The position numbers and the translations under genes were made by a program. Source: Kudoa neothunni (Eukaryota > Animalia > Cnidaria). Taken from it: a stretch of DNA of 64,000 nt. The DNA lies in NCBI GenBank assembly GCA_964304625.1, contig OZ199840.1, positions 209,309-273,308 of the forward strand, written 5' to 3'. The notes under the pieces were generated by a model. The model saw nothing but the letters and a program-made list of their open reading frames with translations, was not told the DNA's origin and made no database searches. Numbering within the stretch: position 1 is the stretch's first letter; each line of letters opens with the position of its first letter. Below, piece by piece: positions 5,917-62,989 of this stretch.

Positions 5917-8900
5917 TTAATCTCTTTTCTTCTTCAATACCACGATGCCAACTATTGCAATAACCATAACCACAGCAACGCATGCAATAATAATTCTAAA
6001 ATCAGTTAATTCAAATATCAGCATTTAAAAATGTTTACATTAGTTTGGTTTTATTCCTAAAAAATATTAAATTTGATAAAAGCATATTATTAAGCTCACC
6101 CTGAACTACTCTTTGCTCCTACGATATATAACATTAAATTACACTGTGAACAAATAATATACCTTGTTGTATGTCAGCACCGCCAAAAATTGTATCATCT
6201 TCAACACTGTAAACAGTCAAATAATAATCATTTCCATCAGGTAAATTATTTATTTTGAATTCTTTACAGGTCACAAAGGCAGCACATCTGTCTACGTTTT
6301 TTCTCATGCAAGATTTTACCACCGCATTAGACTTGACACTACTGTTACGTAACTCCCATCTGCATTTTGATTTATCGTTCATACTGGATGGAACTGTGGT
6401 GGTTACAATGAAACTGTCCCCATCACGTGTAATGACGACTGATATCAATTTTGAGGAGTCAGTTGGGTTTAATTGTGGTGCAGCTAATACAAGTTTCGTT
6501 TAAAAAATTCTTAATAGAGACATTAATTGTAATACTTGATTCTATAATATGCTCTTTTTGTGAAGATTTTCCAATAGCTGTGACTAAAATTTTGTATGTA
6601 TTTGCTGCTTCATACTCGGGAAATGTTATGGAACTGCAAAGGGGGTTTGAAGAACATGTGTTTGCGCTGTTCGCGACATCAGCAAGCTGTGTATCTGAAG
6701 TATCCGGAACTGAAGATTTCGCTATTGTCATTGGGCCACCATCTGCTACCATTGGCACAGCAATTCTAGCTATGTTGAGATCTGCGGAACTTAAACTAGG
6801 AGGGGCAGCTAAAGGGGGTGCTGGTGCTACTGGGGCGGTAACAGGTGTCGTTACTTTCGGCACCACAGGACATGTGTAATAGTCTGTGTAATCGTTACCA
6901 GTCTTCTTTTGTACGACATAACTGCAAGTTGCAGTTGGATCCACGGAATTTAATCGTGCCTTCAATGACAAACCATCCAATGTGATCTTATGTGTTATCG
7001 TTAATGTTGTTAATGCTATTAAGAATTTAAAGAGTAAATTATAATTTCAATAACCTGTTTGTATATTTGTGTAATCTTTTATGTCGTAATCCTTATGTGC
7101 AATCACCCTGATATCATAAGGTTTGTTTGGCTCGAGGTCTTCTATCGTAACTTGTTCACTGCAAATTCCTCTACATGGGGTGTTGCCATTGCATTTCGCG
7201 TGGAAAAAGCTATCTAATCCGGTTGGACTTATTAAATACTCACATGTAGGTTCATCTTTCTTTTGATCATTTGTAGCTGCGGTAGTAGCTATAGCTGTAA
7301 GAGAGACTGTCGTGTCTGTCTTTGTTGATGCGGTAGCTGAAAATGATTTGCTTGCTTCTTTTTCTTTATAATTCATTATTTTTTAATATAAGTATGATGA
7401 TTTACTTGTTCTTATGAATATATTTTCTTTATAATTCGTTGAAACACCATTTACTTCTAATGTGATCTCAATCATGTACGCTTTTCCCGGTGTAAGTCTT
7501 TGAATCACCAATTTTGTTGTGCAATCAGTTTTGCAACTGCCACTTTCTGTACTGGTATTATCGCATGTTGTTGTTGTTAAGGTGTCTGGTTTGATTTTGT
7601 CTGCTAAATAATGTTTAAGAGTACATTTATTAATTATTGGATCAGTTGTTCTTTTAAACAGGACAATATCAAACGACACTCCCTCATGTGTGTATTCTGA
7701 CAGGAATCCTGAAGTTGGTTCAGTAATTGCTAAATAAAATAAGAAAAAAATGCATATTAATATAAGGGTTACCAATTTTAGTTTGCTCGTAACCTATCAA
7801 ATTACCACTAGCAGGTTTTATGTCGTGATGCCTTGTTTGGATTAAAATTTTATAAATCTTTTTATCCGTGATACCATTAAGTTCGACGTACTTACATGGG
7901 GGCGTAACAATCTTTACCGGCACCACCACAAACGGACGTATATGATTGATCAGTTGCTGTATTCAAACCATCTTTTAGACGGAACAAACATATTTCAGAT
8001 GATAGGGAATTGGTAAACTTAACTCCGACTTTTCCTTCGGTTTTTTCTACAATATAAAACTGAGGCTCATACATGGCTATTTTTTCCTTCATATATTGAT
8101 TGGGCATATTGTAAAAGAAACCGGGATATTTTTCGCACCTCACCTCGTAATGCGGTAACAATAAATCAAAGTCAATTGCATTTGCTGTATTATAATTAAC
8201 ACAGTCTTCCCCCTTGGTACCATCTGCATATTTAATATCCTTATAATAAATAGGACAATCTACTGGTGCACATGTTTTTGCTGCCAATTTCAGTTTATTT
8301 GCATCGGCAGTACCTGTAACCATAGACACGCTAATTAGTGGACTAGCCAATAATGCTAAATTAAATTTCTTTCTATGATAAGTTAAATTTATTTACGTAT
8401 TGAATATCCGAACACTTTTGATCCAGCTCCACTAACTGCATTTTGAACATTAGCTGTTTCAATGTCAACATAAACATGTATGTATTTGGTTCTCGGTGAC
8501 ATCTTTTTGTAATCAAAGGTATTCGTATCAGTTTCACAGTCGACGACACATTTATTATTTTCAGCATCACTAACCTTAGCATTGCAGTTGTCGATGTTGG
8601 TAAACGCAGCTGGTGTCGTATTCGCAGCATTCGCTGCAATTTCTACTTCGTTTGATCGCCTTATAAGGCATTTTTTGCCAGCTCCATATTCAGAGCCTTC
8701 AAGTTTGATTTTAATTTCGTATGTGCTATCAGATGCTTTTTTAACAATCTGATATTTCAGAGTTTTATTTGGCGCTTCAGCTGCAGGAACAGCCGCAACT
8801 GCACCTGGAGGACTTGATATTACAACAGTATTTGCTATACCTGATATTAAAACACCTAAACTTACATTGGTATTAAAATTAACTCAGGAAGATACCTAAA

Positions 8901-8929
8901 ACAAGGTAGAGAAATCCAGCTATTTTCAT
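5917..8929 (-). CDS. Paralogue A of Cys-rich FN3-like type I membrane protein family (10 exons; one +1 frameshift)
   Basis: MKIAGFLYLVLG signal exon, same exon structure as copy C, ends IVVLKKKRD*. An extra G in the G5 run at 7898-7902 turns CYAPC into CYAPM*. Confidence 0.88.
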
Positions 8930-9133
8930 GGTTGACAATTAAATGAGCTACCAATTGATGGTTCGGAATACAATTGACCCGAATTCCACTCATCTGTGGA
9001 TATAATAATTCATTCATTGTCAGATAGCAAAACTTATGCTAGACAATAATTATTCAAGTTATTAAAAAATTTATCTAAACCAATTTTTTACCATCTAGCT
9101 CAAATCGGTGTGGTAGATTAATTACGACTTTAA

Positions 9134-10853: not shown

Positions 10854-10859
10854 TTAATG

Positions 10860-17545: not shown

Positions 17546-18947
17546 AAAGTCAAAAATATGACTTTCGTAATGAAAAAAACTATAGAATACCATTAAGATT
17601 ATATCCTATAAGCTATTATCTTGATAAAACGACAGCTGCTTGCAAAAAATTTGAGTACAGTGGGCCGGTGGGACTACCTTCAATAACTTCCCGTCGTTAG
17701 AAGAATGCAACAAAGAATGTACTTAAAATTAATTTTACACTCCTACAATAATTCTTTTGAATATGACTACGCTAGTCGCGTTGATGTTTGCACAGCTGAT
17801 CTTCAAGTCGATGGGACAAACGACTTCAATGTATATGAAAAAACTCAAGTAAACAGATATTATTTCAAGAGAGCTTCCGGTGGTGGTACAGGAGAATGCA
17901 AAACATATAATTATAAGGGATGTAATGAGCCAAATACTCATTTCCAAGTGGGGACGCATGTAATGGCAACTGTATAAGTAATTAATTATTTATTTTTACT
18001 GTTATTAATCGAAAATGCAACTAATTAATCTCAAAAAATACTTAACAGAGTTGATTGCCAAGCGTGAGTTATGTTGAACTCCGCTGCAACTGGTACCGAA
18101 AGAGAAATCAAGATCGTAAGGGACAAGGAAAAGTCCACTTGTGTTCATGCGATTGTAAACAAAAGAGATGGATTACGTGGAGTCTTTGATTTATTTTCTC
18201 AATGCCAAAAGAAGTGTCAGGGTAACTCTAAAAATTAAAATATATGAACTCAGTATGTAAATTTAGCTGATGACGCGGCTATTAAAAGATGCAAATATGA
18301 CCCATACCAACCAACCACCGAAGGGCACATGACAACCAAATATTATTATAATTCTACAAACCAGTTATGTATGCAAATGATGGCTGTTGATATTGAAGTA
18401 GATTCAACCAAAAATTGTTTCGATACAGCTGGAGAATGTATTAGTGCCTGTCCAGCTCGTATGTTTCTGTTATAACCTAAAATTATATTATTTAATTTTT
18501 AAAGTTAACGACGATCCAACAGAAACCAATTTTCCCGATATATCCCCCGTATGCAGCGAACCAAAAGAATCTGGTAATGGAAATGAAGCAAGCACACTAC
18601 CAAGATGGTACTATAATGATACACAAAAGGCGTGTAAACGATTTGCATATACTGGAATTGGTGGAAAAGCGAACAACTTTAAAAGCGAAGCTCTTTGCGA
18701 TTACCTTTGCATTGAAGGAATGACTGAAATTACTTTACCCGAACTAACAACTACCCCGGTACCTACAACTGAGACTACAACAACTTCTACAAGTGACGAC
18801 GAATCTGAATCAACCTCTTCCGATACCCCTCCTGACTCACAAGTGGCTGAGGATATCGATAACCATGAAGATAAAACAAGTGAGCACCAGCCCGCTGAAG
18901 CAGGGGAGGAAACCGAACAGCTGGATAATGCCCAACATACGATATAA
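17546..18947 (+). CDS. Multi-domain (5x) Kunitz/BPTI-like protein with Thr/Ser/acidic tail; disrupted as read, start not found
   Basis: One domain per exon, e.g. YYLDKTTAACKKFEYSG..NNFPSLEECNKEC, RYYF..ECKTYNYKGC..ACNGNC and CSEPKESGNG..PRWYYNDTQKACKRFAYTGIGGKANNFKSEALCDYLC. Frameshifts near 17663 and 17943, stop near 18065. Confidence 0.8.
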
Positions 18948-23852: not shown

Positions 23853-26852
23853 TTAATCCCTTTTCTTCTTCATTACCACGATACCAACTATTGCAATAAC
23901 CACAACCACAGCAACGCAAGCAATAATAATTCTAAAATCAGTTAATTCAAATATTAACATTTAAAAATGTTTACATTAGTTTGGTTTTATTCCTAAAAAA
24001 TATTAAATTTGATAAAAGCATATTATTAAGCTCACCCTGAACTACTCTTTGCTCCTATAATATATATAACATTAAATCACACTGTGAACAAATAATATAC
24101 CTTGTTGTATATCAGCACCGCCAAAAATTGTATCATCTTCAACACTGTAAACAGTCAAATAATAGTCATTTCCATCAGGTAAATTATTTATTTTGAATTC
24201 TTTACAGGTCACAAAGGCAGCACATCTGTCTACGTTTCTTCTCATGCAAGATTTTACTACCGCATTTGACTTGACACTACTGTTACGTAACTCCCATTTG
24301 CATTTTGATTTATCGTTCATACTGGATGGAACTGTGGTGGTTACAATGAAACTGTTCCCATCACGTGTAATGACGACTGATATCAATTTTGAGGAGTCAG
24401 TTGGGTTTAATTGTGGTACACCTAATATAAGTTTCGTTTAAGAAATTCTTAATAGAGACATTAATTGAAGCATTAATTGTAATACTTGGTTCTATAATAT
24501 GCTCTTTTTGTGAAGATTTTCCAATAGCTGTGACTAAAATTTTGTATGTATTTGCTGCTTCATACTCGGGAAATGTTATGGAAATGCAAAGGGGATTTGA
24601 AGAACAGGTGTTTGCGCTGTTAGGCATCCTCAGCAAGCTGTGTATCTGAAGTATCCGGAACTGAAGATTTCGCTGTTGATATTAGACCACCATCTGCCAC
24701 TATTGGCACAGCGATTCTAGCTATGTTGAGATCTGCTGAACTTATACTGGGAGGAGCAGCTGAAGGGGGTACTGGTGCTTGGTGCTACTGGGGCGGGTAA
24801 CAGGTGTCGTTACTTTCGATACCACAGGACATGTGTAATAGTCTGTGTAATCGTTACCAGTCTTCTTTTGTACGACATAACTACAAGTTGCAGTTGGATC
24901 CACGGATTTTAATCGTGCCTTCAATGACAAACCATCCAAGGTGATCTTATGTGTTATCGTTAACGTTGTTAATGCTATTAAAAAATTAAAGTGTAAATTA
25001 TAACTTCAATAACCTGTTCGTATATCTGTGTAATCTTTTATGTCGTAATCCTTATGTGCGATCACCCTGATGTCATAAGGTTTGTTTGGCTCAAGGTCTT
25101 CTATCGTAACTTGTTCGCTGCAAATTCCTCTGCACGGGGCGTTACCATTGCATTTCGCGTGGAAAAAGCTATCTAATCCGGTCGGACTTATTAAATACTC
25201 ACAGGTAGGCTCTTCTTTCTTTTCTCCCGTTGAAAGTCCGGCCATAGCTGTAAGAGAAATTGTTATGTCTGTTTTTGTAGGATCAGTAGTTCCATATGCT
25301 TTACCATCTCCGATTTCTTTACAATACATTATTTTATAAAATAAATATAATGATTCACTCGTTCTTATGAATATATGTTCTTTAAAACCTTGTGTAATAT
25401 CAGTGCCTTCAAATGAGATCTCAATCATGTAGGCTTCTCCCGCTGAAAGTCCCTGAATTACCAATTTTGAGCAATCAGTGTTGCAAGCGGTGCTGCTCTG
25501 GGTGGTACATATTGTGCCGGTCAGGGTGGCTGGCTTTGGTTTATCAGCAAAATAATGTTGAAGAGTACATTTGGTCATTTTTGGCGCTAGGGTCCTCTTT
25601 TAATGAGGATCCATCAAACGTTACACCATCTTTGACATAAGAAGAAAGCAACTCTCCAGCTGCTTCATTAATTACTAAAGAAAATAATAGAAAAATTCAG
25701 ATGAATGTAAGAATTACAAAACTTAGTTAGTTCGTAGCCTCGCAATACTCCACTAGTAGCTGTTATGTCGTGATGCCTTGTTTGGATTAAAACTTTATAA
25801 ATCTTTTTCCCCGCAATGCCATTCAGTTCGACGTACTTACAAGGGGCGTAACAACTCTTTCCGGTTCCACCACAAACTGAAATATATGATGGGTTGTTTG
25901 CTGCGTTCTGGCCATCTTTAAGACTGAATAGGCATATTTCAGATGATTGCGAATTAGTGAATTTGATTCCGACTTTGCCCGCAGTTTTGTCTACAATATA
26001 AAACTGGGGTTCGTAAATGGCTATTTTTTCCTTCATATATTGATTGGGCATTTTGTAAAAGAAGCTGGGATATTTACCGCACCTAACTTCGTAATGCGGT
26101 AACAATAAATCAAAGTCAACTTTATTATTATTGTTTTCGGAACTACAAGTGTTCCCTTTGGTACCAGTTTCGTATTCAATATCTCTATAATAAATAGGGC
26201 AATTTACAGGTGTACATGTTTTTGCTACGAATTTAAGCTTATTGTCGGTAGTGTCTGCAGACACCGTAATTTGTGGATTAGCCAATAATGCTAAATCCAT
26301 TTTATTATTTTGAAAAATTAAGTTGATTTACGTATTGAGTATCCGAATACTTTTGACCCTGCCCCGTTAATTGCGTTTTTAACATTATCTATGCGATCGC
26401 CCGACGAATACATATATGTATTTGGTTCTTGGTGATAGGTTGTCATAAGTGATTGCATTTCCATCAGTTGAACAATCGATAACACATTTATTAGTAGTAC
26501 TAGCATCATTAGGAGGGCAGATTGCGATGTCTACAAACGAATTTGCTGTTTCAGAAGTATTAGCTAAAATTTCTGCTTCTTTAGATCGCTTTATAAGGCA
26601 TTTTTGCTAGCACCATAATCAGAACCTCCGAGGTTGATTTTAATTTGGTCTGGGCTATTAGTTTCACCTTTCACAACCTGATACTTGAGCGTTTTCATTG
26701 GAGTTAGAGTAGGAGATGCCTCCGCAGCTGCAGAATCTTGACTTATAGCAGCATTGGTTTTTCTTGACGTTAAAACACCTGAATATACATCAGTACTAAA
26801 ATTAACTCATGATGATACCTAACGCAAGGTAGAGAAATCCAACTATTTTCAT
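23853..26852 (-). pseudogene. Paralogue B of the membrane protein family; at least 6 single-base indels (pseudogene or poor consensus)
   Basis: MKIVGFLYLALG start, all 10 exons present, ends VVMKKKRD*. Indels near 26602, 26401, 25580, 24796, 24779 and 24624, each changing a run length by one base. Confidence 0.8.
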
Positions 26853-38790: not shown

Positions 38791-41789
38791 ATGAAAATAA
38801 CCAGATTTCTCTACCTTGCTTTAGGTATCATCCCGAGTCTATTTTAATACTAATGTAAGTTTAGGTCTTTTGATATCATGCACAGTCAATGCTACCGGGC
38901 CTTCAAGTCCTCAAGCTGCACCTGCACCTGCGGCTCTAGCTCCAACGAAAACGCTGAAATACCAGATTGTGAAAGGTGCATCTAATAGCCCAAACCAAAT
39001 TAAGATCAAACTTGAAGGCTCTGAATATCCGAGGGGCAATAAGTGTGTTTTAAGGCGATCTAACGAAGCGGAAATCGCAGCCTCTACTACTGCTCCTCGT
39101 GTAACAACAGCTGAGTTTAAAGACATCTATAACTGCGCTGCTAATGATAGTGATAATGCTTCTAATCAATGTGTTGTCGATTGTAATACTGATGAGAATA
39201 AAATCACTTACGATATACTATCACCAAGAACCAAATACATATATGTCAACGTCGGCAGTGGCACAGATACTGTTAAAGAAAAAGTAAATGGAGCAGGATC
39301 AAAAGTATTCGGATATTCAATACGTAAATCAACTTAATTTAATACGAAAATAAATTAAATTTAGCACTATTGACCAACCCACATATCGCCGTTTCTACAG
39401 ACACTGCCAACAATAAGTTGCAATTCCTAGTCAAAACTTGTGCTCCCGTAAATTGCCCAATTTATTATAAAGATATCCAATATGAAGTTGGTACCAAAGG
39501 GGAAGATTGTAAAACTGGGAATACTGCAAACACAGTTGATTTTGATTTATTGTTACCTCATTACGAAGTGAAGTGCGGAAATTACCCCAGTTTCTTTTAC
39601 GATATGCCCAATCAATATATGAAGAAAAACATAGCCATTTATGAGCCTCAGTTTTATATCGTAACTAAAATTGAAAACAAAGTTGGAATTAAATTCACTA
39701 ATTCCTTGTCGTCTGAAATATGTTTGTTCCGTCTAAAAGATGGTTTGAATGCAGCAACTGATCAATCATATACGTCCGCTTGTGGTGGTGCCGGTAAAGA
39801 TTGTTACGCCCCATGTAACTACGTCGAACTCAATGGCATTGCGGGGAAAAAGTTTTATAAAGTTTTAATCCAAACAAGGTATCGCGACATAAAAGCTACC
39901 GGTGATAGTCCGGATGGTTACACGCAAACTAAATTCGGTAATTCTTACATTAAGACGAATTTTTCATTATTTTCATTAGCAATTACTGAACCAGCTGGAG
40001 GATTTCTTTCTACTTATACTAATGTTGGCGTTTCGTTTGACGGTACCCCATTTAAAGAAGGAACTAATCCACAAATTAATATATGTACTCTTAAACATTA
40101 TTTTGCTGATAAACCAAAGCCAGCCACCCCAACCGGCACAACATGTACCACTCAGAGCAGCAGCAGCACCACTTGCAACACTGATTGCTCAAAATTGGTA
40201 ATTGAGGGACTTTCAGCAGGAAAAGCGTACGTGATTGAGATTACATTTGGTGGAATTAATGATCCAAGTGGTTTCAAAGAACATATATTCATAAGAACAG
40301 GTAAATCAGTATATATATTTTATAAAATAACGAATTATATATAGCAAAGGGAACAGGTAAAGAGTATGGAACTACTGATCCTACGAAGACAGACACGACA
40401 GTCTCTCTTACAGCTATGGCTGGGCTTTCATCGGGAGAAAAGAAAGATGAACCTACCTGTGAGTATTTAATAAGTCCGACCGGATTAGATAGCTTTTTCC
40501 ATGCGAAATGCAATGGCAACACCCCGTGTAGAGGAATTTGCAGTGAACAAGTTACGATAGAAAACCTTGAGCCAAACAAACCTTATGACATCAGGGTCAT
40601 CGCACATAAGGATTACGACATAAAAGATTACACAAATATACAAACAGGTTATTGAAGTTATAATTTATTCTTTAAAATTTTTATAGCATTAACAACGTTA
40701 ACGATAACACACAAGATCACATTGGATGGTTTGTCATTGAAGGCAAGATTAAATTCCGTGGATCCAACTGCAACATGCAGTTATATCGTAAAGAAGAAAA
40801 CTGGTAACGATTACATAGATTATTACACATGTCCAGTGGTGTCGGAAGTAGCGACGCCTGTTACTGCCCCGGTAGCACCACCACCACCCGCTTCAGCTCC
40901 TACTTCCAGTTTAAGTTCTGCGGATCTCAACATAGCTAGAATTGCCATACCGACGACAGCAGATGATGGTCCAATGACAGCAGCGAAATCTTCAGTTCCG
41001 GATACTTCAGATACACAGCTTGCTGATGTCGCGAACAGCGCAAACACATGTTCTTCAAACCCCCTTTGCAGTTCCATAACATTTCCCGAGTATGAAGCAG
41101 CAAATACATACAAAATTTTAGTCACAGCTATTGGAAAATCTTCACAACAAGAGCATATCATAGAATCAAGTATTACAATTAATGTCTCTATTAAGAATTT
41201 TTTAAACGAAACTTGTATTAGCTGCACCACAAGTAAACCCAACTGACTCCTCAAAATTGATATCAGTCGTCATTACACGTGATGGGAACAGTTTCATTGT
41301 AACCACCACACTTCCATCCAGTATGAACGATAAATCAAAATGCAGATGGGAGTTACGTAATAGCAGTGTCAAGTCTAATGCTGTAGTAAAATCTTGCATG
41401 GGAAGAAGCGTAGACAGATGTACTGCCTTTGTGACCTGTAAAGAATTCAAAATAGATAATTTACCTGATGGAAATAACTATTATTTGACTGTTTACAATG
41501 CTCAAGATAATAATATTTTCGGTGGTGCTGACATTCAACAAGGTATATTATTTGTTCACAGTGTGATTTAATGTTATATATTGTAGGAGCAAAGAGTAGT
41601 TCAGGGTGAGCTTAATAATATGTTTTTATCAAATTTAACATATTTTAGGGATAAAACCAAACTTATGTAAACATTTTTAGATGCTAATATTTGAATTTAC
41701 TGGATTTTAGAATCATTATTGCATGCGTTGCTCTGATTGTGGTTGTGGCGGTAGTTGGAACCGTGGTATTGAAGAAGAAAAGGGATTAA
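38791..41789 (+). CDS. Paralogue C, intact, 869 aa type I membrane protein with Cys-rich FN3-like modules
   Basis: Exons 38791-38824, 38865-39323, 39365-39937, 39980-40300, 40345-40647, 40687-41169, 41222-41542, 41587-41605, 41649-41666, 41711-41789 (2610 nt, open frame, all GT-AG). Signal MKITRFLYLALGLLISC, TM IIIIACVALIVVVAVVGTVVL, tail KKKRD*. Confidence 0.93.
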
Positions 41790-42129
41790 ATTAAGTTTCG
41801 TTAACTATAGTTTATAGGTAATATTTATGATAGAAATTTTTCGATCACGTGGCATTATTTTATATTTTGAATCATTAGTTGAACTTATTGTTTTTTAAAA
41901 TTTGTATGTGTCTTTAGAGAGGAAATATGATCTCCGATATTTTTTTATAAAATTATATGATTTTAGCAGAATTGTCTCCAATTTATATTAGCTTCAAATA
42001 AGCTTTTTGTGACTCTAATTATAATTTGAAATCTGATCAAATTATGTTCATGAATTTCCAGGTTAAAATATTAATATCTTGAGTTTGAATTTATTGGAAA
42101 AATTTATCATAGAAAAGTTAAATGAAAAA

Positions 42130-44984: not shown

Positions 44985-47900
44985 TTAATCTCTTTTCTTC
45001 TTCAATACCACGATGCCAACTATTGCAATAACCACAACCACAGCAACACATGCAATAATGATTCTAAAATCAGTTAATTCAAATATCAGCACTTAAAAAT
45101 GTTTACATAAGTTTTGTTTTATTCCTAAAAAATATTAAATTTGATAGAAGCATATTATTAAGCTCACCCTGAACTACTCTTTGCTCCTACGATATATAAC
45201 ATTAAATTACACTGTGAACAAATAATATACCTTGTTGTATGTCAGCACCGCCAAAAATTGTATCATCTTCGACACTGTAAACAGTCAAATAATAGTTATT
45301 TCCATCAGGTAAATTATTTATTTTGAATTCTTTACAGGTCACAAAGGCAGTACATCTGTCTACGTTTCTTCTCATGCAAGATTTTACTACCGCATTTGAC
45401 TTGACACTGCTGTTACGTAACTCCCATTTGCATTTTGATTTATCGTTCATGGTGGCTGGAAGTGTGGTGGTTACAATGAAACTGTTCCCATCACGTGTAA
45501 TGACGACTGATATCAATTTTGAGGAGTCAGTTGGGTTTAATTGTGGTGCACCTAATATAAGTTTGATTTAAACAATTCTTAATAGAGACATTAATTGAAG
45601 AATTAATTGTAGTACTTGATTCTATAATATGCTCTTTTTGTGAAGATTTTCCGATAGCTGTGACTAAAATTTTGTATGTATTTACTGCTTCATACTCGGG
45701 AAATGTTATGGAACTGCAAAGGGGATTTGAAGAACAGGTGTTTGCGCTGTTAGTTGCACCAGCAAGCTGTGTATCTGAAGTATCCGGAACTGAAGATTTC
45801 GCTGCTGTCATTGGGCCACCATCTGCTACCATTGACACAGCAATTCTAGCTATGTTGAGATCCGCAGAACTTAAACTGGAAGTAGGAGCTGAAGCGGGTG
45901 GTGGTACCATTGGGGCGGTAACAGGTGTCGTTACTTTCGGCACCTCTGGACATGTGTAATAATCTGTGTAATCGTTACCAGTCTTCTTTTGTACCACATA
46001 ACTACAAATTGCAGTTGGATCCACGGAATTTAATCTTGCCTTCAATGACAAACCATCCAAGGTGATCTTATGTGTTATCGTTAATGTTGTTAATGCTATT
46101 AAAAATTTACAGAATAAATTATAACTTCAATAACCTGTTCGTATATCTGTGTAATCTTTTATGCCGTAATCCTTATGTGCGATCACCCTGATGTCATAAG
46201 GTTTGTTTGGCTCAAGGTCTTCTATCGTAACTTGTTCGCTGCAAATTCCTCTACATGGGGTGTTGCCATTACATTTCGCGTGAAAAAAGCTGTCCAATCC
46301 AGCCGGACTCACCAGATACTCACAGGTAGGTTCATCTTTCTTTTGTGAAGATTCAGTTGTGGTAGCAACCGTAGCTGTAAGAGAGACTGTCGTGTCTGTC
46401 TTTGTAGGGTCAGTAGTTCCATACTCTTTACTTGCTCCATTTTCTATATAATTTATTATTTTACAAAATAAATATATTGAATTACTTGTTCTTATGAATA
46501 TATATTCTTTAAAATCACTTGGAAGACTTTGGCCTGTAAATGTGATTTCAATCATGTAGGCTTTTCCCGCTGTAAGTCTTTGAAGCACTAACTTTGTTGA
46601 ACAATCAATTTTGCATTTGTTATCACCGGAACCTCCTCTGGAACTGTCAGTGTCGCATGTTGTTTCAGTTGGAGATCCTGATTTGATTATGTCTGCCAAA
46701 TAGTGTTTAAGAGTACATGTATTAATTTGTGAATTAGTTTCTCCTTTAAATGAGGTACTATCAAACTTAACACCAACATTGGTATATGAAGAAAGCAATC
46801 CGACGTCTTTTTCAGTAATCGCTAGGGAAAATAATAAAAAGTGCGTGTAAATATAAGGATTACCATATTTAGTTTGTTCATAACCTCTCAATGTACCGGC
46901 AGCGGCTTGAATGTCGTGATGCCTCGTTTGAATTAAAATTTTATAAATCTTTGTATCCGTGATGCCATTAAGTTCGACGTACTTACAAGGGGCGTAACAA
47001 CTCTTTCCGGTTCCACCACAAACTGAAATATATGATGGGTGGTTTGCTGCGTTCTGGCCATCTTTAAGACTGAATAGACATATTTCAGATGATTGCGAAT
47101 TAGTGAATTTAATTCCGATTTTTCCTTCAGTTTTGTCTACAATATAAAATTGAGGATTATAAATGGCTATGTTTTCCTTCATATATTGATTCGGCATATT
47201 GTAAAAGAAACCGGGATATTTTTCGCATCTTACTTCGTAATGCGGTAACAATAAATCAAAGTCAACTTTGTTCGCTTCATTTTCAGTATTACAATTTGTC
47301 GCCTTGGTACCTTCTGCGTATTTGATATCTTTGTAATAAATAGGACAATTTACAGGTGCACATGGTTTTGCTGCGAATTTCAACTGATGAACATCTGTAG
47401 ACACGGTAATTTGTGGATCAGCCAATAATGCTAAATTAAATTGATTTTATGTTAAATTAAATTGATTTACGTATTGAATATCCGAATACTTTTACTTCTG
47501 ATGTTCGACTTGTCCCTGTAACAGTCTGCACATCATTCCCGACATCGACTAATATGTATTTGGTCCTTGGCGAAAGCATTTCATAGGCGATTTTATTCTC
47601 ATCGGTATTACATGCGATGACACATCTACTGGTATCAGAATTATCGTTGTGGTTAGCGGCGCAGCTGGCAATATCTGCAAACGCAGCTGCTGGTACAGGA
47701 GGAGTACGAGCTGTCATTTCCGCTTCGTTAGATCGCATTATAATGCACCTTTTGTCACTTCCATAGTCAGAGCCTTCAAGTTTGATTTGAATATCGTCCA
47801 TGCCATCACTTTTCTTCACAATCTGATATTTTAACGTTTTCGTTCGAGCTTCAGCTACAGGTGCAGCTGCAACTGCAGCTGGAGGACTTGAACTTACAAC

Positions 47901-48003
47901 AGTATTGGCTGTGCTTGATATCAAAACACCTATGCTTACATTAGCATTAAAATTAACTCAGGAAAATACCTAAAACAAGGAAGAGAAATTCAGCTATTTC
48001 CAT
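44985..48003 (-). CDS. Paralogue D, apparently intact
   Basis: MEIAEFLFLVLG start, same 10-exon structure, ends IVVLKKKRD*. Introns 3 and 4 are 42 nt and stop-free, which produces the 432-aa read-through ORF. Confidence 0.92.
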
Positions 48004-53872: not shown

Positions 53873-56800
53873 GGCAGTGGCTATTACCACAGGAATCAAT
53901 TTCTCTGCAATTGTTGTCTCTATTAAATAACTAATTTCACATTACTATTATTTATATTTTTCTCTACTAAATTATAGAATTAGGTAACAATTGAGAATAT
54001 CTTTTTTTACGTATTTATATTTTTTATTTTATTGATTGTTTTCCATAATTAAATGAAAAATTTATTAATCTTAATTTATTGCATGATCAAAATTGTATTA
54101 TATCATTTTCTGTCAATAATAAGGCTAAAGCTGACGAATTTTGTGTGTTTTTGTAGGTCTGACATTACTTTAGGAGCGCGCGCTTCCACATGATATATTC
54201 AATTTCGTGTTATTTAATTTATTTCCAATCTTTACAATGTTTAAATTATGTGATTTATTGTATTCTATTCATAAATTATGAACTTCAAGATAAAATATGC
54301 TCACCATATTTCATAGAAATGATGTGAATTTTCCGCGTTAGATTTCGATATAGACAAAAATTTTGAGAAAACTAATCATAATTAGGTCGTTTTTCAGAAA
54401 TTAGATGAATATAACACGATGAAAAATGGCTATCCTAATCAAATAAATAATGAGACATCTAAGAAAATTTAGTTTTCTTTTTGTATCCGATAGTGGTTAA
54501 AGCGTATCCCTTTGGTCTCTCAACCGACTTCACTCGAGATGGAATTTTTAAGGCTAAAATAATTTAAAAAGAGAAAGGAAATAAAAGTACCATCAAGCTC
54601 GATCGTATTTAAAGTAGGTGCTAATTGATCTTTAGATAAAACAGTTTGGAGCTCGAGAGCATTTTCATTTGAAATATTATTAACAATAATATTCTCGATA
54701 CTCTCCTCACCTTGCGGAACAATATTATTACTAACACCCTCAACAATTATTTGAGATTTAAAAATATTCCCAACAACATCTATTTTTTGCAATTTAGATA
54801 CGAGTAATGTATTTAAATTAAGTGCCTTATACCTCTTCCTTCAATAATATCTCCATCTTCGTCTAAAGCCTCGGAGTTTTCACTGGTGCGATTTACTAAA
54901 ACTAAATCGAGAAAAATTAAGTTACCTAACTGATTTATTTGTTTTATTAATTTGATGTCGTGGTTCTTGATTGCTTTTTCTATTGTGTTGAATAGTGATG
55001 GGCAACTATCATAAAACTCCCCACAATATTCAGCGGGAAACGCTGCGGACTTATTTGTGTAAATCACAGAGTTTTTTAAGTATTTTCCATAATAATTAAA
55101 AATTCCTTTGGGCTTTATTGAAATTCTCTCTTTTGGATTGATATCTATAGTTCCAATTTCCAAGAATCGGCTCATATAACCTTTGGACCATCTAGGGTGG
55201 TATCGATTTGAATCGAACATTGGAAGCAGGTTAAACGCTCTCTTTTTAAAAATACGACTACATGGAAGGAGGTACGATCTGTAAATATAACAATTGCATT
55301 TTATGGATGTAGTTAAACTATCTGTATTAGTGTTTTTGTCAAAATTTTGAATTTGTTTGTGGATTATATTGAAGGCAAATGGATTTAAATGATTAAAATA
55401 CGCGTTTAGAACTTCATTTGAGGTATCAAAATTAACTGGGTTCAGTAATATTTTGGTTATATTGTATCTCCTTTCTATTCTCATTGATTTGAGAGCGTCA
55501 AAGAAATAACGGAAAAAATCATTAAGATTTGAAAATTTCTTTATTGTTTGTTTTAATTGACCATTAATGGCTTCTAATCTATTATTGGTCAAGTTTTCAT
55601 AGAAATGATGTGCTTCACTTAATCCTATGACCCATTCATCAGCGATTGGTTCCCAATTGGATTTAAAATAGTTAATAAACTTATCGTTGCTTTGTTGAAA
55701 AAGGTTATTGCATAATTTATAGAATTCATGTTTATTTTTCGAATAGATAATTTTATTAAGAGTTTCAAGCAATTGGTCCCTTTTCTCTCGTGTGATACCG
55801 TATTTCGACATAGTTATTTCACGTCTGAAACTTTGAGAAACATGAAATATACAGATCATTAGATTGGAGTTTGGAAATAATTCTTTCAAACATTTCCTTA
55901 GAGTGTGGTGCTTGTCAGTAATGATCTTTCGGACATTTTGAGTCATGTTCGGCATCATTTTTATTAGTTGAGAAATATACCATTTAATTGACTCCGCCGT
56001 TTCATCGTACGAGATGCAGCCGCTAGTTATGTGGGTTTCACCAACCTAGTCTTCAGCAACAGACAGATACAATAGCGCACTAACAAACTAATAAAATAAC
56101 GAAATAGAGAAAACCTCCTAAGATTACCGTGAGTCTAGCAGTTTATAGGTTGCATCAAGCATGAGTAATTCTGGAAAGAAATTAATTGTGTTGAGTATCT
56201 GTTTATCCATAAAAAAGATTCCACAAACATTTTTATTATCATCTGATAAAACGCTCACCATGCAATTGTATTGATTCTTTAAAATTTCTAAAATTAAAGT
56301 AACGTTATCAGTCCCAACTTCAGAGGATTTTTTAATGTTGTGGATAGCTTTCAAAGGTATATTCTTGCCTGTCTCGTCATTTATCTTGGCTTGTATGAGC
56401 TTTTTGTTTGCTCTGACAAATAGCCATCACATTGGTTTAATTTCCTCTGACTAGGTAAGTTTTCTTAGATCCATGGATCATTTGGATGGTTATGGGTAGT
56501 GTTAGAAGATCTAATCTCCAGGAAATTTCCATCTACACTTACTCTTAATGTAACTTTAAATGGGCAATCTCTTTTAAGGGAATTTTTCTTGCGTTCGCCT
56601 TTACCTCTGGTTCGGTAATGGGCTCCAAAGTAACATACGTAAGTTATTTCGTAATACACTAGCGTGTTTTTAATATTTCGATTAACCCGGTTTTGCACTG
56701 AGTCATTTCTTCTTGAATCTCGAGCCTTTAAATTCACAAAATGACTTTTCTCATACTCCTGAATATAAAATTTTAAACTTTCCAAAGTTCCAAATTTCAT

Positions 56801-58827: not shown

Positions 58828-59505
58828 GGCTAAAGTCCAATATCTGTATCTGTTCTCGGGAATTTTCGACGCACTTCGCCCATTTAGCGCAGTGAACGAT
58901 TTCAAGAAAAAATCAATGTTTTTGAAAACATTAATAATATTATATTTCTCCGATATAACTCGGTTTAAAATATCTAACGTATTGTTGAACAAACTTTCAA
59001 TCACCTTGGTTGTTAAATAAGTATTCGAAATGTTCTGGTGGTGGAAGTTTGGCAATATTATCAAGGAATGACACCGATGATGGATACCAGAATAAGTTTA
59101 TAGTATGTAAAAAACATAATTTCATTATAATTGCACCCGTTTTTGAATCATAAAAACTTTCTTAATGGAAATTATTTCAGTTTGTTATCTGTATCTTAAA
59201 AGAACCAGATTTAATTTTATTATATCAAGTGTAATGTTTAAATTTATATATTATCTATTATTTATGAGTTGAAAAAAATCATATGGGATTTTATGGTCAT
59301 GAAATCCGAAATGTCATAAACAAACTCTCACAAGGAGTATGTGGATAAATTTTTGATTTTTTGGTCAGAAAAAAATATTTTAAATTAAGTTAGGAATATC
59401 ATTTAACCTAATAATGAAGTTACGGCCGTTTTAAAGCTAAATTCCGACTTTTGCCGATTGGCTTTATTTCGGTCCGAGCACGGACACAGATATTGGACTT
59501 TAGCC
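58828..59505. mobile_element. MITE (Merlin-like by TSD length)
   Basis: TIR GGCTAAAGTCCAATATCTGT.TC.GT.CTCGG, flanks GTATTATA/GTATTATT. Confidence 0.8.
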
Positions 59506-59978
59506 GTATTATTTAATATCTTTTTGGTTACAATGGAAAAATTACTAGGCTAATGCTTTTCGTAATCCTTCCGCGTTAGTACAATAATCAGAATGGGTAT
59601 ATGTTCGTTGAGACAAAATTTCGAAGTCTCGAGGAACCTATTCATTTAAGAAATGATGGGAAAAATATTAAATACTCCTTATAATAAATAGTATTACCAT
59701 TATTCTGCTAATGCTTAATATTTTACTTTAATGTTATCCCAAAAAACAATTAATCATGGAAAAACTTTAGATTTCATTAATGTTTTAAAGAATCCAACGA
59801 ATTTATATAAGCTAAATTGCAACAATATGGTTAAGACTAATTTTTAATAATGTGAATAGTTATTCCCTAGTCTAAGTTTTGCTAACTGACAATGAATGAA
59901 TCATTATATCCACAAATGTGTGAAATTCGGGTCAATTGTATCCCGAACCATCAATTGGTAGTTCATTTAATTGTGGCA

Positions 59979-62900
59979 ATGAAAATAACTAGATTTCTCT
60001 ACCTTGCGTTAAGTATCGTCGTGGGTCGATTTTAATGCTAATGTAAGTTTAGGTGTTTTGATATCAAGCACATCCAATACTGATGGAGGTTCAAGTCCTC
60101 AAGCGGCACCTGCACCTGCGACTCCTGCTCCAGCTCTAGCTCCAACAAAAACGCTGAAATACCAGATTGTGAAAGGTGAAACTAATAGCCCAAACCAAAT
60201 TAAGATCAAACTTGAAGGCTCTGAATATCCGAGGGGCAATAAGTGTGTTTTAAGGCGATCTAACGAAGCGGAAATCGCAGCCTCTACTACTACTTCTCGT
60301 GTAACAACAGCTGAGTTTAAAGACATCGATAACTGCGCAGCTAATGATAATGTTCCTAATAAATGTGTTGTCGATTGTAATACTGATGAGAATAAAATCA
60401 CTTACGATATACTATCACCAAGAACCAAATACATATATGTCAACGTCGGCAGTGACACAAATACTGCTAAAGTCAAAGTTAATGGAGCAGGATCAAAAGT
60501 ATTCGGATATTCAATACGTAAATCAACTTAATTTAATATGAAAATAAATTGAATTTAGCATTATTGACCAATCCACATATTGTTGTTTCTACAGACACTA
60601 CCAACAATAAGTTGCAATTCCTAGTCAAAACTTGTGCTCCTGTAAATTGCCCAATTTATTATAAAGATATTCAATATGAAGTTGGTACCAAAGGGGGAGA
60701 TTGTAAAACTGGGAATACAGCAAACCAAGTTGATTTTGACTTATTGTTACCGCATTACGAAATGAGGTGTAACAATTATCCCAGTTTCTTTTACAATATG
60801 CCCAATCAATATATGAAGGAAAGCATAGCCATTTATGAGCCTCAGTTTTATATTGTTAAAAAAACTGATAACAAAGTAGGAATTAAGTTCACCAATTCCC
60901 CATCGTCTGAAATATGCTTATTCAGTCTAAAAAATGGTCTAAATGCAGCAACCGATAAATCATACAAGTCTGTTTGTGGTGGTATTGGTAAAAGCTGTTA
61001 CGCTCCCTGTAAGGACGTTGTGTTAAATGGTATTGCAAACCAAGTAATTTACGGTATTTTGATCCAAACCAGACATCACAACATAAAAGCTACTGACAAT
61101 GATTTGGAAGGTTACAAAACAACTAAATTTAGTAATCCTTAGACTAATATGCATTTTGTATTATTTTCATTAGTCATTACTGAATCAGGTGCAGGTTTGC
61201 TTTCGGCTTATACCAATGTTGGTGTGACGTTTGATGCTCCCCAGTTAAAAGCGAGCTTAGATTCAAAAGTGACAAAATGTACTCTTAAGCATTATCTTGC
61301 TGATAAACCAGAGCCAACCTCCCTAACTGGTACAGCATGTGCCCAGAACGGTGGCGCTAGCGCCACTTGCGGCACTGAATGCGCAAAGTCGGTGATTCAG
61401 GGCCTTAACGCGGGAAAAGCATATATGATAGAAATTACACCTGAGACTATCGAGGATCCAAGTAGTTTCAAAGATCATATATTTATAAGAACAAGTAAAT
61501 TCTAACGTATTTATTGTATAAAATAACGAATTATATATAGCAAAGGGAACAGGTAAAGAGTATGGAACAACTGATCCTACAAAGACAGACACGACATTCT
61601 CTCTTACAGCTATGGCTGCTACCGCAACTGAAGCCGAACAAAAGAAAAGTGAACCTACCTGTGAATATTTGGTGAGTCCGGCTGGATTGGACAGCTTTTT
61701 CCACGCGAAATGCAATGGCAACACCCCATGTAGAGGAATTTGCAGCGAACAAGTTACGATAGAAGACCTTGAGCCAAACAAACCTTATGACATCAGGGTC
61801 ATCGCACACAAGGATTACGGCATAAAAGATTACACAGATATACGAACAGGTTATTGAAGTTATAATTTACTCTTTAAATTTTTAATAGCATTAACAACGT
61901 TAACGATAACACATAAGATCACCTTGGATGGTTTGTCATTGAAGGCAAGATTAAATTCCGTTGATCCAACTGCAACTTGCAGTTATGTCGTACAAAAGAA
62001 GACTGGTAACGATTACACAGACTATTACACATGTCCTGTGGTGCCGAAAGTAACGACACCTGTTACCGCCCCAGTAGCACCAGCACCCCCTTTAGCTGCT
62101 CCTCCTAGTTTAAGTTCCGCAGATCTCAACATAGCTAGAATTGCTGTGCCAATGGTAGCAGATGGTGGCCCAATGACAGCAGCGAAATCTTCAGTTCCGG
62201 ATACTTCAGATACACAGCTTGCTGATGTCGCGAACAGCGCAAACACATGTTCTTCAAACCCCCTTTGCAGTTCCATAACATTTCCCGAGTATGAAGCAGC
62301 AAATACATACAAAATTTTAGTCACAGCTATTGGAAAATCTTCACAAAAAGAGCATATTATAGAATCAAGTATTACAATTAATGTCTCTATTAAGAATTTT
62401 TTAAACGAAACTTGTATTAGCTGCACCACAATTAAACCCAACTGACTCCTCAAAATTGATATCAGTCGTCATTACACGTGATGGGGACAGTTTCATTGTA
62501 ACCACCACAGTTCCATCCAGTATGAACGATAAATCAAAATGCAGATGGGAGTTACGTAACAGTAGTGTCAAGTCTAATGCGGTGGTAAAATCTTGCATGA
62601 GAAGAAACGTAGACAGATGTGCTGCCTTTGTGACCTGTAAAGAATTCAAAATAAATAATTTACCTGATGGAAATGATTATTATTTGACTGTTTACAGTGT
62701 CGAAGATGATACAATTTTTGGCGGTGCTGACATACAACAAGGTATATTATTTGTTCACAGTGTGATTTAATGTTATATTTATCGTAGGAGCAAAAAGCAG
62801 CTCAGGGTGAGCTTAGTAATATTTTTTTATTTTATTCAATGTTTTTTAGGAATAAAACCAAACTTATGTAAACATTTTTAAATGCTGATATTTGAATTAA

Positions 62901-62989
62901 CTGATTTTAGAATCATTATTGCATGTGTTGCTGTGGTTGTGGTTATTGCAATAGTTGGCATCGTGGTATTGAAGAAGAAAAGAGATTAA
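59979..62989 (+). CDS. Paralogue E, apparently intact
   Basis: MKITRFLYLALS start, 10 exons with open frame, micro-exons GAKSSSG/NKTKLI, TM, tail KKKRD*. Confidence 0.92.

What the first reader, a model, noticed from the sequence alone, without database searches (positions are those of the whole stretch)
5917..62989. Five-copy family of an unrecognised ~870-aa Cys-rich type I membrane protein: candidate variant surface antigen system
Seen: after splicing, five dispersed paralogues (A 5917-8929-, B 23853-26852-, C 38791-41789+, D 44985-48003-, E 59979-62989+) encode a signal peptide, tandem disulfide-rich modules, a single TM helix and an invariant 5-aa tail KKKRD. Known: a variable Cys-rich ectodomain with a conserved TM and tiny tail is the layout of parasite variant surface proteins such as Giardia VSP with its CRGKA tail. 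This is an analogy, not homology. Inference: a lineage-specific host-interface family expanding in TE-rich chromatin. I do not recognise it as a named family.
Basis: partly seen in the sequence, partly recalled or inferred. Interest (0 to 1): 0.88.

Follow-up and report, generated by a model that had tools for sequence, protein, structure and literature searches.

The report
Huge FN3 surface-protein family in Kudoa
The five repeated genes are real members of a very large, undescribed family (at least 150 copies) of single-pass membrane proteins built from seven fibronectin-type-III domains in the fish-muscle parasite Kudoa neothunni; they are a strong candidate for the parasite's host-facing surface coat, but a role in antigenic variation is untested.

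Summary
The observation largely holds. Five paralogues, each about 3 kb and 82-87% identical in DNA, sit exactly at the stated coordinates. Each has 10 exons and 9 mini-introns of 39-64 nt. Copies C, D and E are intact (869-873 aa). Copy A has one frameshift and copy B has at least six indels.

The protein has a signal peptide, seven FN3-like modules with four invariant Cys each, two micro-exons, one TM helix and a KKKRD tail. It is not Cys-rich (3.4% Cys, no CXXC motif). The fold is fibronectin type III: the AF2 model reaches pLDDT 90 and matches titin, EpoR and CD45 FN3 domains.

The genome matches the published Kudoa neothunni assembly (Myxozoa, a tuna parasite) in size, three chromosomes, mitochondrial contig and a single (TAAACC)n telomere. 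That paper's main text does not mention the family.

Genome-wide, at least 150 intact copies of the exon-3 double module exist, out of 439 first-look candidates, and they lie in tandem arrays. The copies are mosaics made by gene conversion. The membrane-distal modules evolve fastest (dN/dS 0.5-0.6, locally above 1). Module 5 is strongly constrained.

No named relative exists among 5.8 billion proteins. A surface or host-interface role is likely. One-at-a-time expression is untested because RNA data could not be reached.

First-stage notes of this scan flag the same family in several other windows of this genome.

The parts
38791..41789 (+). Copy C, intact gene (869 aa), 10 exons
   Evidence: Splice model and translation. 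No stop before the terminal TAA.
44985..48003 (-). Copy D, intact gene (873 aa). Introns 3 and 4 are in frame and stop-free, which gives a 432-aa continuous ORF.
59979..62989 (+). Copy E, intact gene (872 aa). Its 5' third is 94-98% identical to copy C.
5917..8929 (-). Copy A, frame-broken by a single +1 insertion (C5 run versus C4) in exon 3 at about 7897. Probably a pseudogene; an assembly error is less likely.
   Evidence: The published assembly QV is 48.5.
23853..26852 (-). Copy B, pseudogene. Indels that are not multiples of 3 occur in exons 2 (-1, +1), 4 (+1) and 6 (+1, +4, +1), with in-frame stops.
38791..38824 (+). C exon 1 (34 nt): first 11 codons of the signal peptide
   Evidence: A split signal-peptide exon is found in 19 of 20 paralogues.
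38865..39323 (+). C exon 2: remainder of the signal peptide, a Pro/Ala linker and module M1. This is the most variable module (dN/dS 0.64, locally above 1).
39365..39937 (+). C exon 3: modules M2 and M3 (8 conserved Cys). This is the part best conserved across the superfamily.
39980..40300 (+). C exon 4: module M4, variable (dN/dS 0.47), with an indel-rich loop bounded by Cys
40345..40647 (+). C exon 5: module M5. It gives a weak Pfam fn3 match and its core is under very strong purifying selection.
40687..41169 (+). C exon 6: module M6, with a Pro/Ala/Ser/Thr-rich insert between Cys2 and Cys3
41222..41542 (+). C exon 7: module M7, membrane-proximal FN3 domain
   Evidence: AF2 pLDDT 90.3 and pTM 0.84. 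Foldseek matches FN3 domains.
41587..41605 (+). C micro-exon 8 (19 nt). It is needed to keep the reading frame.
   Evidence: Conserved in distant paralogues.
41649..41666 (+). C micro-exon 9 (18 nt). Skipping it would also stay in frame, so its inclusion needs RNA evidence.
41711..41789 (+). C exon 10: TM helix plus the KKKRD tail and stop codon
38581..38790 (+). Conserved 5' flank of about 210 nt, shared by all five copies and better conserved than exons 1-2. Candidate common promoter or 5'UTR.
41790..42020 (+). Conserved 3' flank of about 230 nt, shared by all five copies. Candidate 3'UTR.

Best explanation
These genes belong to a massively expanded, Kudoa-restricted family of type I membrane glycoproteins. 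A cleavable signal peptide targets the protein to the secretory pathway. Seven FN3 domains, each probably stabilised by disulfides, form a rod-like ectodomain. A short stalk encoded by two micro-exons and one TM helix anchor it in the membrane. The 3-5-residue Lys tail is too short to signal, so the protein acts as a displayed scaffold rather than a signalling receptor.

The family grows by tandem duplication in arrays. It is reshuffled by segmental gene conversion between copies, including pseudogenes. Conversion homogenises the 3' half and the flanks. The membrane-distal modules M1 and M4 accumulate amino-acid changes fastest.

Most likely the proteins coat the parasite surface and mediate contact with the fish (or annelid) host, through adhesion and/or presentation of a diversified surface.

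Shown here: gene structure, fold, copy number, mosaicism and selective constraint. Inferred: surface location, host-facing role and disulfide bonding.
For: Gene model and paralogy.

FN3 fold: the exon-7 model has pLDDT 90.3 and matches titin Fn3, EpoR, integrin beta4 and CD45. The exon-3 model is a tandem FN3 that resembles cytokine-receptor and CD45 d1-d2 modules. Pfam fn3 matches exon 5 at E=1.8e-4. The language-model search returns only fn3 clusters. HMMER hits to DSCAM-like and fibronectin-like proteins fall on module M5.

Four invariant or nearly invariant Cys occur per module.

Real coding constraint: dN/dS is 0.2-0.35 in M2, M3, M5, M6 and M7, and 0.02-0.1 in the M5 core.

Distal variability: dN/dS is 0.64 in exon 2 and 0.47 in exon 4, with windows above 1 at codons 71-105.

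Gene conversion: mosaic identity tracts; a runs test gives p<=0.001 in six of ten pairs and p=0.004 in a seventh; dS falls from 0.73 in exon 3 to 0.10 in exon 7.

Family size: at least 150 exon-3 matches, all with E<=2e-68, 147 without stops, out of 439 candidates. At least 150 exon-7 matches out of 305 candidates.

Conserved architecture in the 20 sampled paralogues, including signal peptide, micro-exons and TM with Lys tail.

Organism and context.
Against: The genome paper itself reports very few parasite RNA reads.

The tail ...KKRD fits the canonical C-terminal KKXX di-lysine ER-retrieval motif. This holds for the five window copies and for 15 of 21 tails sampled across the family. It could mean ER or Golgi residence or regulated surface delivery.

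Whole-exon dN/dS never exceeds 1, so diversifying selection is not demonstrated.

K. neothunni plasmodia live inside muscle fibres (my own knowledge, not tested here), where antibody pressure may be limited.

Signal-peptide and TM calls rest on hydropathy only. SignalP and DeepTMHMM were not available.
Confidence: 0.6

Rival explanations
1. True antigenic variation system. One or a few family members are expressed at a time. Switching, together with gene conversion from silent or pseudogene copies, changes the exposed distal modules to evade fish antibodies.
For: Large archive of at least 150 copies. Tandem arrays are about two-fold enriched within 1 Mb of contig ends (47 of 150 versus about 15% expected, counted with contig lengths). 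Mosaic conversion tracts and pseudogenes are present. The distal modules are variable. A strongly conserved 5' flank is shared by the copies and could support common regulation. Antigenic variation has been reported phenomenologically in other myxozoans with no known mechanism (bioRxiv 10.64898/2026.02.11.705288).
Against: There are no expression data at all. dN/dS is below 1 for every whole exon. Many arrays are chromosome-internal. About 98% of the exon-3 copies scored are free of stops (147 of 150), unlike archives dominated by pseudogenes. The parasite's main fish stage is intracellular (my own knowledge).
Confidence: 0.15
2. Parasite-to-parasite recognition or adhesion repertoire. Diversified homophilic or heterophilic FN3 receptors would mediate cell-in-cell organisation, plasmodium fusion or non-fusion, or gamete and sporoplasm recognition. 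Functional analogues are the Hydractinia Alr allorecognition genes, Dscam and clustered protocadherins.
For: The host is a cnidarian lineage. A clustered family of single-pass proteins with unusual Ig-fold domains and variable distal domains is known from the Hydractinia allorecognition complex (Huene et al. 2022, seen only as a reference in PMC11792419; what that family looks like is my own recollection). FN3 and Ig rods are typical adhesion modules. Module M5 is extremely conserved, which would suit a shared cis or trans contact.
Against: There is no cytoplasmic signalling tail, unlike my recollection of Alr1/2, Dscam and protocadherins. No sequence or fold match to Alr-type Ig domains was seen. 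The scale of expansion in a genome of about 5,300 genes looks more like host-driven diversification.
Confidence: 0.17
3. ER or early-secretory resident family. The invariant KKXX-type tail would retrieve the proteins to the ER, where they would act as lumenal scaffolds or chaperone-like factors rather than as a surface coat.
For: KKKRD has Lys at positions -4 and -3. Fifteen of 21 tails sampled across the family keep that register. KKXX as a COPI-dependent retrieval signal of type I membrane proteins is established knowledge.
Against: Six of the 21 sampled tails break the register (KKK, KNKN and KNKG endings, plus two loci with no clean Lys tail), so the conserved feature is a Lys cluster typical of a stop-transfer signal. 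Hundreds of rapidly diversifying ER residents would have no precedent. Variable distal modules argue for external ligands.
Confidence: 0.05
4. Non-functional repeat: decaying copies of a duplicated segment or transposon cargo with no protein function.
For: Two of the five window copies are frame-broken. The surroundings are rich in transposon remnants.
Against: Of 150 exon-3 copies, 147 lack stops, as do 143 of 150 exon-7 copies. dN/dS is well below 1 with high dS. Exon indels come in multiples of 3 while intron indels do not. Cysteines are invariant across copies sharing only 40-50% identity. No transposase lies inside the 3.45-kb unit and its aligned ends show no obvious inverted repeats (by eye).
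Confidence: 0.03

Closest known systems
Animal FN3-repeat type I membrane proteins (cytokine-receptor ectodomains, CD45 d1-d4, DSCAM/sidekick/neogenin FN3 stalks)
   Same: Same fold: Foldseek probability 1.0 and TM 0.5-0.65 for the single module. Both are tandem arrays of about 100-aa beta-sandwich modules ahead of one TM helix. One module per phase 1-1 exon is typical of animal extracellular modules. From my own knowledge, CD45 and cytokine-receptor D1 domains also carry extra disulfides.
   Different: Sequence similarity is marginal: Pfam scores 22 bits against a cut-off of 25, and for one module only. There is no WSxWS motif, no other domain type and no signalling tail. A family-specific four-Cys pattern recurs in every module. 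The family has hundreds of paralogues that evolve in concert and by mosaic exchange.
Giardia/diplomonad VSPs, and the 'VSP-like' genes reported in Sphaerospora molnari (bioRxiv 10.64898/2026.02.11.705288)
   Same: Signal peptide, variable ectodomain, single TM, very short conserved basic tail, multigene family in a parasite. S. molnari is also a myxozoan.
   Different: VSPs have more than 10% Cys and many CXXC motifs, with a CRGKA or [KR]X[KR]XK[KR] tail. This family has 3.4% Cys, no CXXC, an FN3 fold and a KKK(R/S/K/N)(D) tail. S. molnari has 18 such genes; this family has at least 150. No homology is indicated.
Hydractinia Alr allorecognition gene family (Huene et al. 2022 PNAS)
   Same: From my own recollection of that work: a clustered cnidarian family of single-pass proteins with tandem divergent beta-sandwich domains, a variable distal domain, pseudogenes and recombination between paralogues.
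   Different: As I recall, Alr domains are Ig V-set and I-set-like and the tails carry ITAM/ITIM-like motifs. Here the domains are FN3 and the tail has 5 residues. No sequence comparison was made here; the paper was seen only as a cited reference.
Taeniid oncosphere antigens EG95/45W
   Same: From my own knowledge: parasite surface or secreted proteins built on an FN3 domain with a signal peptide and a C-terminal anchor, encoded by small multigene families.
   Different: As I recall, those have one or two FN3 domains, few copies and belong to an unrelated lineage (cestodes). No similarity was detected in any search here.

Membership tests
Fibronectin type III domain (Pfam PF00041, E-set fold) | Seven-stranded beta-sandwich of about 90-100 residues with FN3 topology | tested here: met
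   The exon-7 AF2 model (pLDDT 90.3, pTM 0.84) has seven strands. The top Foldseek hits are all FN3 domains at probability 1.0. The exon-3 model matches tandem FN3 receptors.
Fibronectin type III domain (Pfam PF00041, E-set fold) | Sequence match to the Pfam fn3 HMM above the gathering threshold | tested here: not met
   Only exon 5 matches, at 22.1 bits against a cut-off of 25 (E=1.8e-4). The other five module exons give no fn3 hit.
Giardia-type variant-specific surface proteins (VSP) | Cys-rich ectodomain (more than 10% Cys) with repeated CXXC motifs | tested here: not met
   3.3-3.5% Cys; zero CXXC and zero CXC motifs.
Giardia-type variant-specific surface proteins (VSP) | Conserved C-terminal CRGKA tail (or [KR]X[KR]XK[KR] in S. 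molnari) | tested here: not met
   The tail is KKKRD here and KKK(R/S/K/N)(D) across the family.
Giardia-type variant-specific surface proteins (VSP) | Mutually exclusive expression with switching | not testable with these tools
Class I cytokine receptor homology module | WSXWS motif in the membrane-proximal FN3 domain | tested here: not met
   No WSxWS motif in C, D or E; only one Trp in the whole protein.
KKXX di-lysine ER-retrieval signal bearers | Lys at -3 and -4 (or -3 and -5) from the C-terminus of a type I membrane protein | tested here: inconclusive
   Met by the five window copies and by 15 of 21 tails sampled across the family; not met by the other 6. Function was not tested.
Parasite variant surface antigen families (general kind) | Large paralogous archive with segmental gene conversion or mosaicism | tested here: met
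   At least 150 copies. A runs test gives p<=0.001 in six of ten pairs and p=0.004 in a seventh. Identity tracts are mosaic.
Parasite variant surface antigen families (general kind) | Positive (diversifying) selection on exposed regions | tested here: inconclusive
   Whole-exon dN/dS is 0.64 (M1) and 0.47 (M4), against 0.2-0.35 elsewhere. Only short windows exceed 1. No recombination-aware site model was run.

The most novel reading that the evidence does not exclude
This family is the molecular basis of antigenic variation in a metazoan parasite. It would be an archive of several hundred FN3-rod surface proteins expressed one or a few at a time under a shared promoter. New variants would be assembled by segmental gene conversion from silent and pseudogene copies. 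That would give Myxozoa (parasitic cnidarians) a system functionally equivalent to those of trypanosomes, Plasmodium, Giardia and Pneumocystis, built on an animal adhesion fold.
Probability: 0.13. Interest if true: 0.92.

Novelty: new variant of a known kind. Interest (0 to 1): 0.7.

Why it matters
Kudoa genomes are among the most reduced animal genomes, with about 5,300 predicted genes. Yet this one family supplies at least 150, and possibly about 400, genes. That makes it at least 3% of the predicted genes and so one of the genome's large families.

The main text of the genome paper does not mention it (word search for fibronectin, surface and antigen). No named relative exists in public protein collections.

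Myxozoans cause major fishery and aquaculture losses. From my own knowledge, K. neothunni causes post-mortem 'jelly meat' in tuna. How myxozoans persist in immunocompetent fish is an open question. Antigenic variation has been inferred in other myxozoans without a known mechanism.

A defined and well-modelled gene family gives concrete targets for expression profiling, localisation, serology, diagnostics and vaccine work. It is also a case study of concerted and mosaic evolution of FN3 modules.

Tried and rejected

2. Joined spliced protein. All searches used exon-wise window references or naturally continuous ORFs, such as D's 432-aa read-through ORF. Joined translations were used only inside local scripts to count residues, Cys, motifs and hydropathy.

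3. One alignment of D's 432-aa ORF with exon fragments for a multi-domain fold (A1). MAFFT stacked all the fragments onto module M5. I dropped A1 and folded exons 3 and 7 separately.

4. PDB profile searches. Exon 3 gave nothing. Exon 7 gave only a weak titin match at E=0.007.

5. Profile-profile comparison between modules. These gave only marginal E-values (0.007-0.33), although three of the four alignments put the Cys in register. Descent of the modules from a common repeat is therefore likely but not proven.

6. Organism guesses. Orthonectid (Intoshia), Strongyloididae, eriophyoid mites and Oikopleura were all rejected on intron length, mitochondrial features, HSP70 identity or genome size.

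7. Transposon-cargo reading. No transposase lies within the 3.45-kb unit and its aligned ends show no obvious inverted repeats.

8. 'Introns more conserved than exons' as proof of positive selection. Rejected, because dS in the same exons is 0.4-0.9 and 40-nt introns are mostly splice signals.

Full report
**1. Observation**

A blastn of the five stated intervals against the window recovers each copy against every other over its full length of about 3 kb, at 81.9-87.2% identity. A MAFFT alignment shows nine short gaps in coding potential, each bounded by GT..AG.

Removing these nine introns (39-64 nt) gives uninterrupted reading frames in three copies:
- copy C, 38791-41789 on the + strand, 869 aa
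- copy D, 44985-48003 on the - strand, 873 aa
- copy E, 59979-62989 on the + strand, 872 aa

Copy A (5917-8929, - strand) has a single extra C at about 7897 in exon 3. Copy B (23853-26852, - strand) has six indels that are not multiples of three, in exons 2, 4 and 6, and several stops. The published assembly quality is QV 48.5. B is therefore a pseudogene and A probably is one too.

All five copies end ...KKKRD-stop after a strongly hydrophobic helix of about 21 residues. All begin with a hydrophobic signal-like peptide that is split by intron 1.

**2. Support for the splice model without RNA**

Exon lengths among the intact copies differ only by multiples of three (459/465, 573/567, 321/336, 303/309, 483/480). 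Intron lengths differ freely.

I fetched twenty further paralogues from all three chromosomes. Their protein identity to copy C ranges from 93% down to 27%. All keep the same collinear exon 2-7 layout.

Further support from these paralogues:
- Nineteen of 20 have an ATG, a short exon 1 and a mini-intron that read in frame into exon 2 and give a hydrophobic N-terminus.
- The two micro-exons (19 and 18 nt) and their splice sites align across paralogues whose flanking introns cannot be aligned.
- All but one have a TM segment, followed in nearly all by a tail of 3-5 Lys-rich residues, about 245 nt after exon 7.

Exon 9 could be skipped without breaking the frame, so its inclusion needs RNA evidence.

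Only exon-wise references and naturally continuous ORFs were used. Joined translations were used only in local scripts for counting.

**3. What the protein is**

Module exons 2-7 all begin and end in phase 1. Each module carries four invariant or nearly invariant cysteines. Exon 3 carries eight, because it holds two modules. That gives 28 ectodomain Cys in seven modules.

Overall Cys content is only 3.3-3.5%. There is no CXXC or CXC motif, no WSxWS and no RGD.

Pfam finds only a sub-threshold fn3 match, in exon 5 (22.1 bits, cut-off 25).

An exhaustive HMMER search of 1.84 billion representative proteins with D's continuous 432-aa ORF returned 29 hits. Most were short unannotated ORF fragments from ENA and Logan contigs. 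The rest were animal FN3 proteins (DSCAM-like, fibronectin-like) that hit module M5.

Structure prediction gave the following:
- AlphaFold2 on exon 7, with a 24-sequence paralogue alignment, gives a confident seven-strand sandwich (pLDDT 90.3, pTM 0.84). Its Foldseek neighbours are all FN3 domains: titin Fn3-90, EpoR, integrin beta4 and CD45 d3-d4. The ESM-Atlas neighbours are mostly fn3 clusters or phage tail-tip Ig-like (tip attachment protein J) clusters.
- Exon 3 folds less confidently (pLDDT 68.7) into two beta domains. Its best matches are tandem-FN3 receptor modules: IL-17RA, IL-2R gamma, gp130 and CD45 d1-d2.
- The language-model search returns only fn3 clusters.

Profile-profile comparison between modules is only marginal (E 0.007-0.33), although three of the four alignments put the cysteines in register.

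The resulting architecture is:
- signal peptide, then a Pro/Ala linker
- M1 (exon 2)
- M2 and M3 (exon 3)
- M4 (exon 4)
- M5 (exon 5)
- M6 (exon 6), with a Pro/Ala/Ser/Thr-rich insert
- M7 (exon 7)
- a 12-residue stalk from the two micro-exons
- TM helix
- KKKRD tail

**4. Organism**

The genome has 40,260,978 bases in four contigs: 17.15, 12.04 and 11.05 Mb, plus an 18,219-bp contig. The small contig uses TGA as Trp, has 44% GC, and carries highly divergent genes and no convincing tRNA set.

An intronless HSP70 is at most 78% identical to any animal protein, which indicates a very fast-evolving animal lineage.

These features match the Kudoa neothunni assembly of Weber, Paulini and Blaxter (G3 2025, PMC12239612). 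That assembly is 40.2 Mb with N50 12.0 Mb, three chromosomes plus a circular mitochondrial genome, 30.4% GC, median intron 49 bp and 45.6% repeats. It has a (TAAACC)n telomere at a single chromosome end. I found that repeat only at the right end of contig 2.

K. neothunni is a myxozoan (parasitic cnidarian) recovered from yellowfin tuna sequencing data. The annotation used protein hints only, because few RNA reads mapped. A word search of the paper's main text finds no mention of fibronectin, surface or antigen; its supplement was not examined.

**5. Size and distribution of the family**

A profile of the exon-3 double module finds 439 first-look candidates in the genome. Only 150 of them are scored. 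All 150 have E<=2e-68, nearly all are full length, and 147 lack stops. Exon 7 gives 305 candidates, of which 150 are scored and 143 lack stops. The family therefore has at least 150 members and possibly about 400, against 5,316 predicted proteins.

The copies lie in same-strand tandem arrays on all three chromosomes. Examples are C3:37-460 kb, C3:8.65-8.75 Mb, C3:9.75-9.86 Mb, C2:9.79-9.87 Mb and C1:16.3-16.9 Mb.

Of the 150 scored copies, 47 lie within 1 Mb of a contig end, against about 15% expected. This is enrichment, not restriction. Tandem clustering also makes the count non-independent.

The window lies at C3:209-273 kb, inside the largest array.

The intergenic DNA in the window is mostly remnants of piggyBac, MULE and pogo-like transposases.

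**6. How the family evolves**

Pairwise identity along the gene is mosaic:
- C/E are 94-98% identical in alignment columns 150-750, then 67-81%.
- B/D are 95% identical in columns 900-1050.
- B/C are 91% identical in columns 1350-1500.
- A/E are 98-100% identical in columns 2100-2850.

A Sawyer-type runs test over 914 polymorphic sites gives p<=0.001 in six of ten pairs, p=0.004 in a seventh and p=0.02 in an eighth. Copy B, a pseudogene, takes part in these tracts.

Synonymous divergence falls from 0.73 in exon 3 to 0.18 in exon 6 and 0.10 in exon 7, and the 3' introns are equally homogenised. The near-identity of the membrane-proximal half is therefore recent gene conversion, not extra protein constraint.

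About 210 nt upstream and about 230 nt downstream of each gene are also strongly conserved. These may be a shared promoter or UTR, and they would also provide substrates for conversion.

dN/dS by exon:

| Exon | Module | dN/dS |
|---|---|---|
| 2 | M1 | 0.64 |
| 3 | M2-M3 | 0.23 |
| 4 | M4 | 0.47 |
| 5 | M5 | 0.28 |
| 6 | M6 | 0.25 |
| 7 | M7 | 0.35 |

In sliding windows, pN/pS exceeds 1 only at codons 1-35 and 71-105, and in a few low-divergence 3' windows where pS is tiny. The M5 core sits at 0.02-0.1 despite pS of 0.15-0.45.

The genes are thus clearly under protein-level selection. Constraint is relaxed, or selection is diversifying, on the distal modules, and M5 is unusually constrained. 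Positive selection is not demonstrated.

**7. Interpretation**

The best reading (confidence about 0.6) is a lineage-specific, massively expanded family of surface-displayed FN3-rod glycoproteins at the parasite's interface with its host. The family diversifies by duplication, birth and death of copies, and mosaic conversion. The tail of up to 5 residues rules out direct signalling.

Whether this is an antigenic-variation system in the strict sense (about 0.13-0.15) cannot be judged without expression data.

A parasite-to-parasite recognition or adhesion role is a serious rival (about 0.17). It would be analogous to the Hydractinia Alr, Dscam or protocadherin families.

However, KKK, KNKN and KNKG tails also occur, so the conserved feature may simply be a Lys stop-transfer cluster.

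A non-functional repeat is excluded by the constraint data.

**8. Relation to known work**

No paper in the searchable library links Kudoa to FN3 proteins.

Two recent Sphaerospora molnari studies report 18 Giardia-like, Cys-rich 'VSP' genes plus RIFIN/STEVOR-like and ETRAMP-like genes. They note that antigenic variation has been observed in myxozoans without a known mechanism. Those genes differ from this family in having more than 10% Cys, CXXC motifs and a different tail.

A profile search of 5.8 billion proteins with the exon-3 alignment finds only four unannotated fragments at about 40% identity, from ENA and Logan contigs. One of them (L001, 29% GC) carries collinear exon 2-6 homologues with exons 2 and 3 fused. 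The family therefore extends to at least one related, unidentified organism.

The family is undescribed, but its fold and general logic are familiar. I class it as a new variant of a known kind.

First-stage notes of this scan flag the same family in several other windows of this genome. Those notes are unverified. My genome-wide counts are consistent with them.

Noticed in passing
window 52092-53543 (+); also 70-432 (+), 29338-30518 (+), 43070-44380 (-): piggyBac-type transposase ORFs (Pfam DDE_Tnp_1_7). One is a near-full-length 484-aa ORF (E=3e-64). The others are fragments lying between the family genes.
   Followed up: partly
window 54816-56045 (-) and 36458-37088 (+): A MULE/Mutator-like transposase ORF of 410 aa and a DDE_1 (pogo-like) fragment. 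MULE expansion has been reported as a shared myxozoan trait (bioRxiv 10.64898/2026.02.11.705288).
   Followed up: partly
window 18402-18944 (+): An ORF with a clear Kunitz/BPTI protease-inhibitor domain (Pfam PF00014, E=2e-16), lying between copies A and B. Its gene model and any secretion signal were not examined.
   Followed up: no
G000:C4 (L006+L007, 18,219 bp): A mitochondrial contig with 44% GC, well above the roughly 30% of the nuclear genome. It uses TGA as Trp, has a highly divergent cox1 and no convincing tRNA set.
   Followed up: partly
L013:1174-2094 (-), L016:4928-5836 (+), L024:1192-2046 (-), L028:1192-2028 (-): In four paralogues, exons 6 and 7 lie in one continuous ORF of 279-307 aa. 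Intron 6 has therefore been lost or is in frame and stop-free. Similarly, L001 (from a related organism) has exons 2 and 3 fused. Intron presence varies within the family.
   Followed up: no
window 40345-40647 (exon 5 of C) and its equivalents in the other copies: The core of module M5 has pN/pS of 0.02-0.1 while synonymous divergence is 0.15-0.45. It is by far the most constrained part of the ectodomain, which suggests a conserved binding or assembly surface.
   Followed up: partly
G000:C2:12039536-12040069: A (TAAACC)n telomeric array at only one contig end in the whole assembly. The other five chromosome ends are uncapped, so 'subtelomeric' statements about the gene arrays are provisional.
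   Followed up: yes
L001 (Logan SRR33849685), L002 (ENA ERZ795007), L031 (ENA ERZ28624939): Short AT-rich contigs from unrelated public assemblies encode homologues of the family at 27-42% identity. They probably come from other Kudoa-like parasites in host or environmental samples. The sample origins were not resolved.
   Followed up: partly
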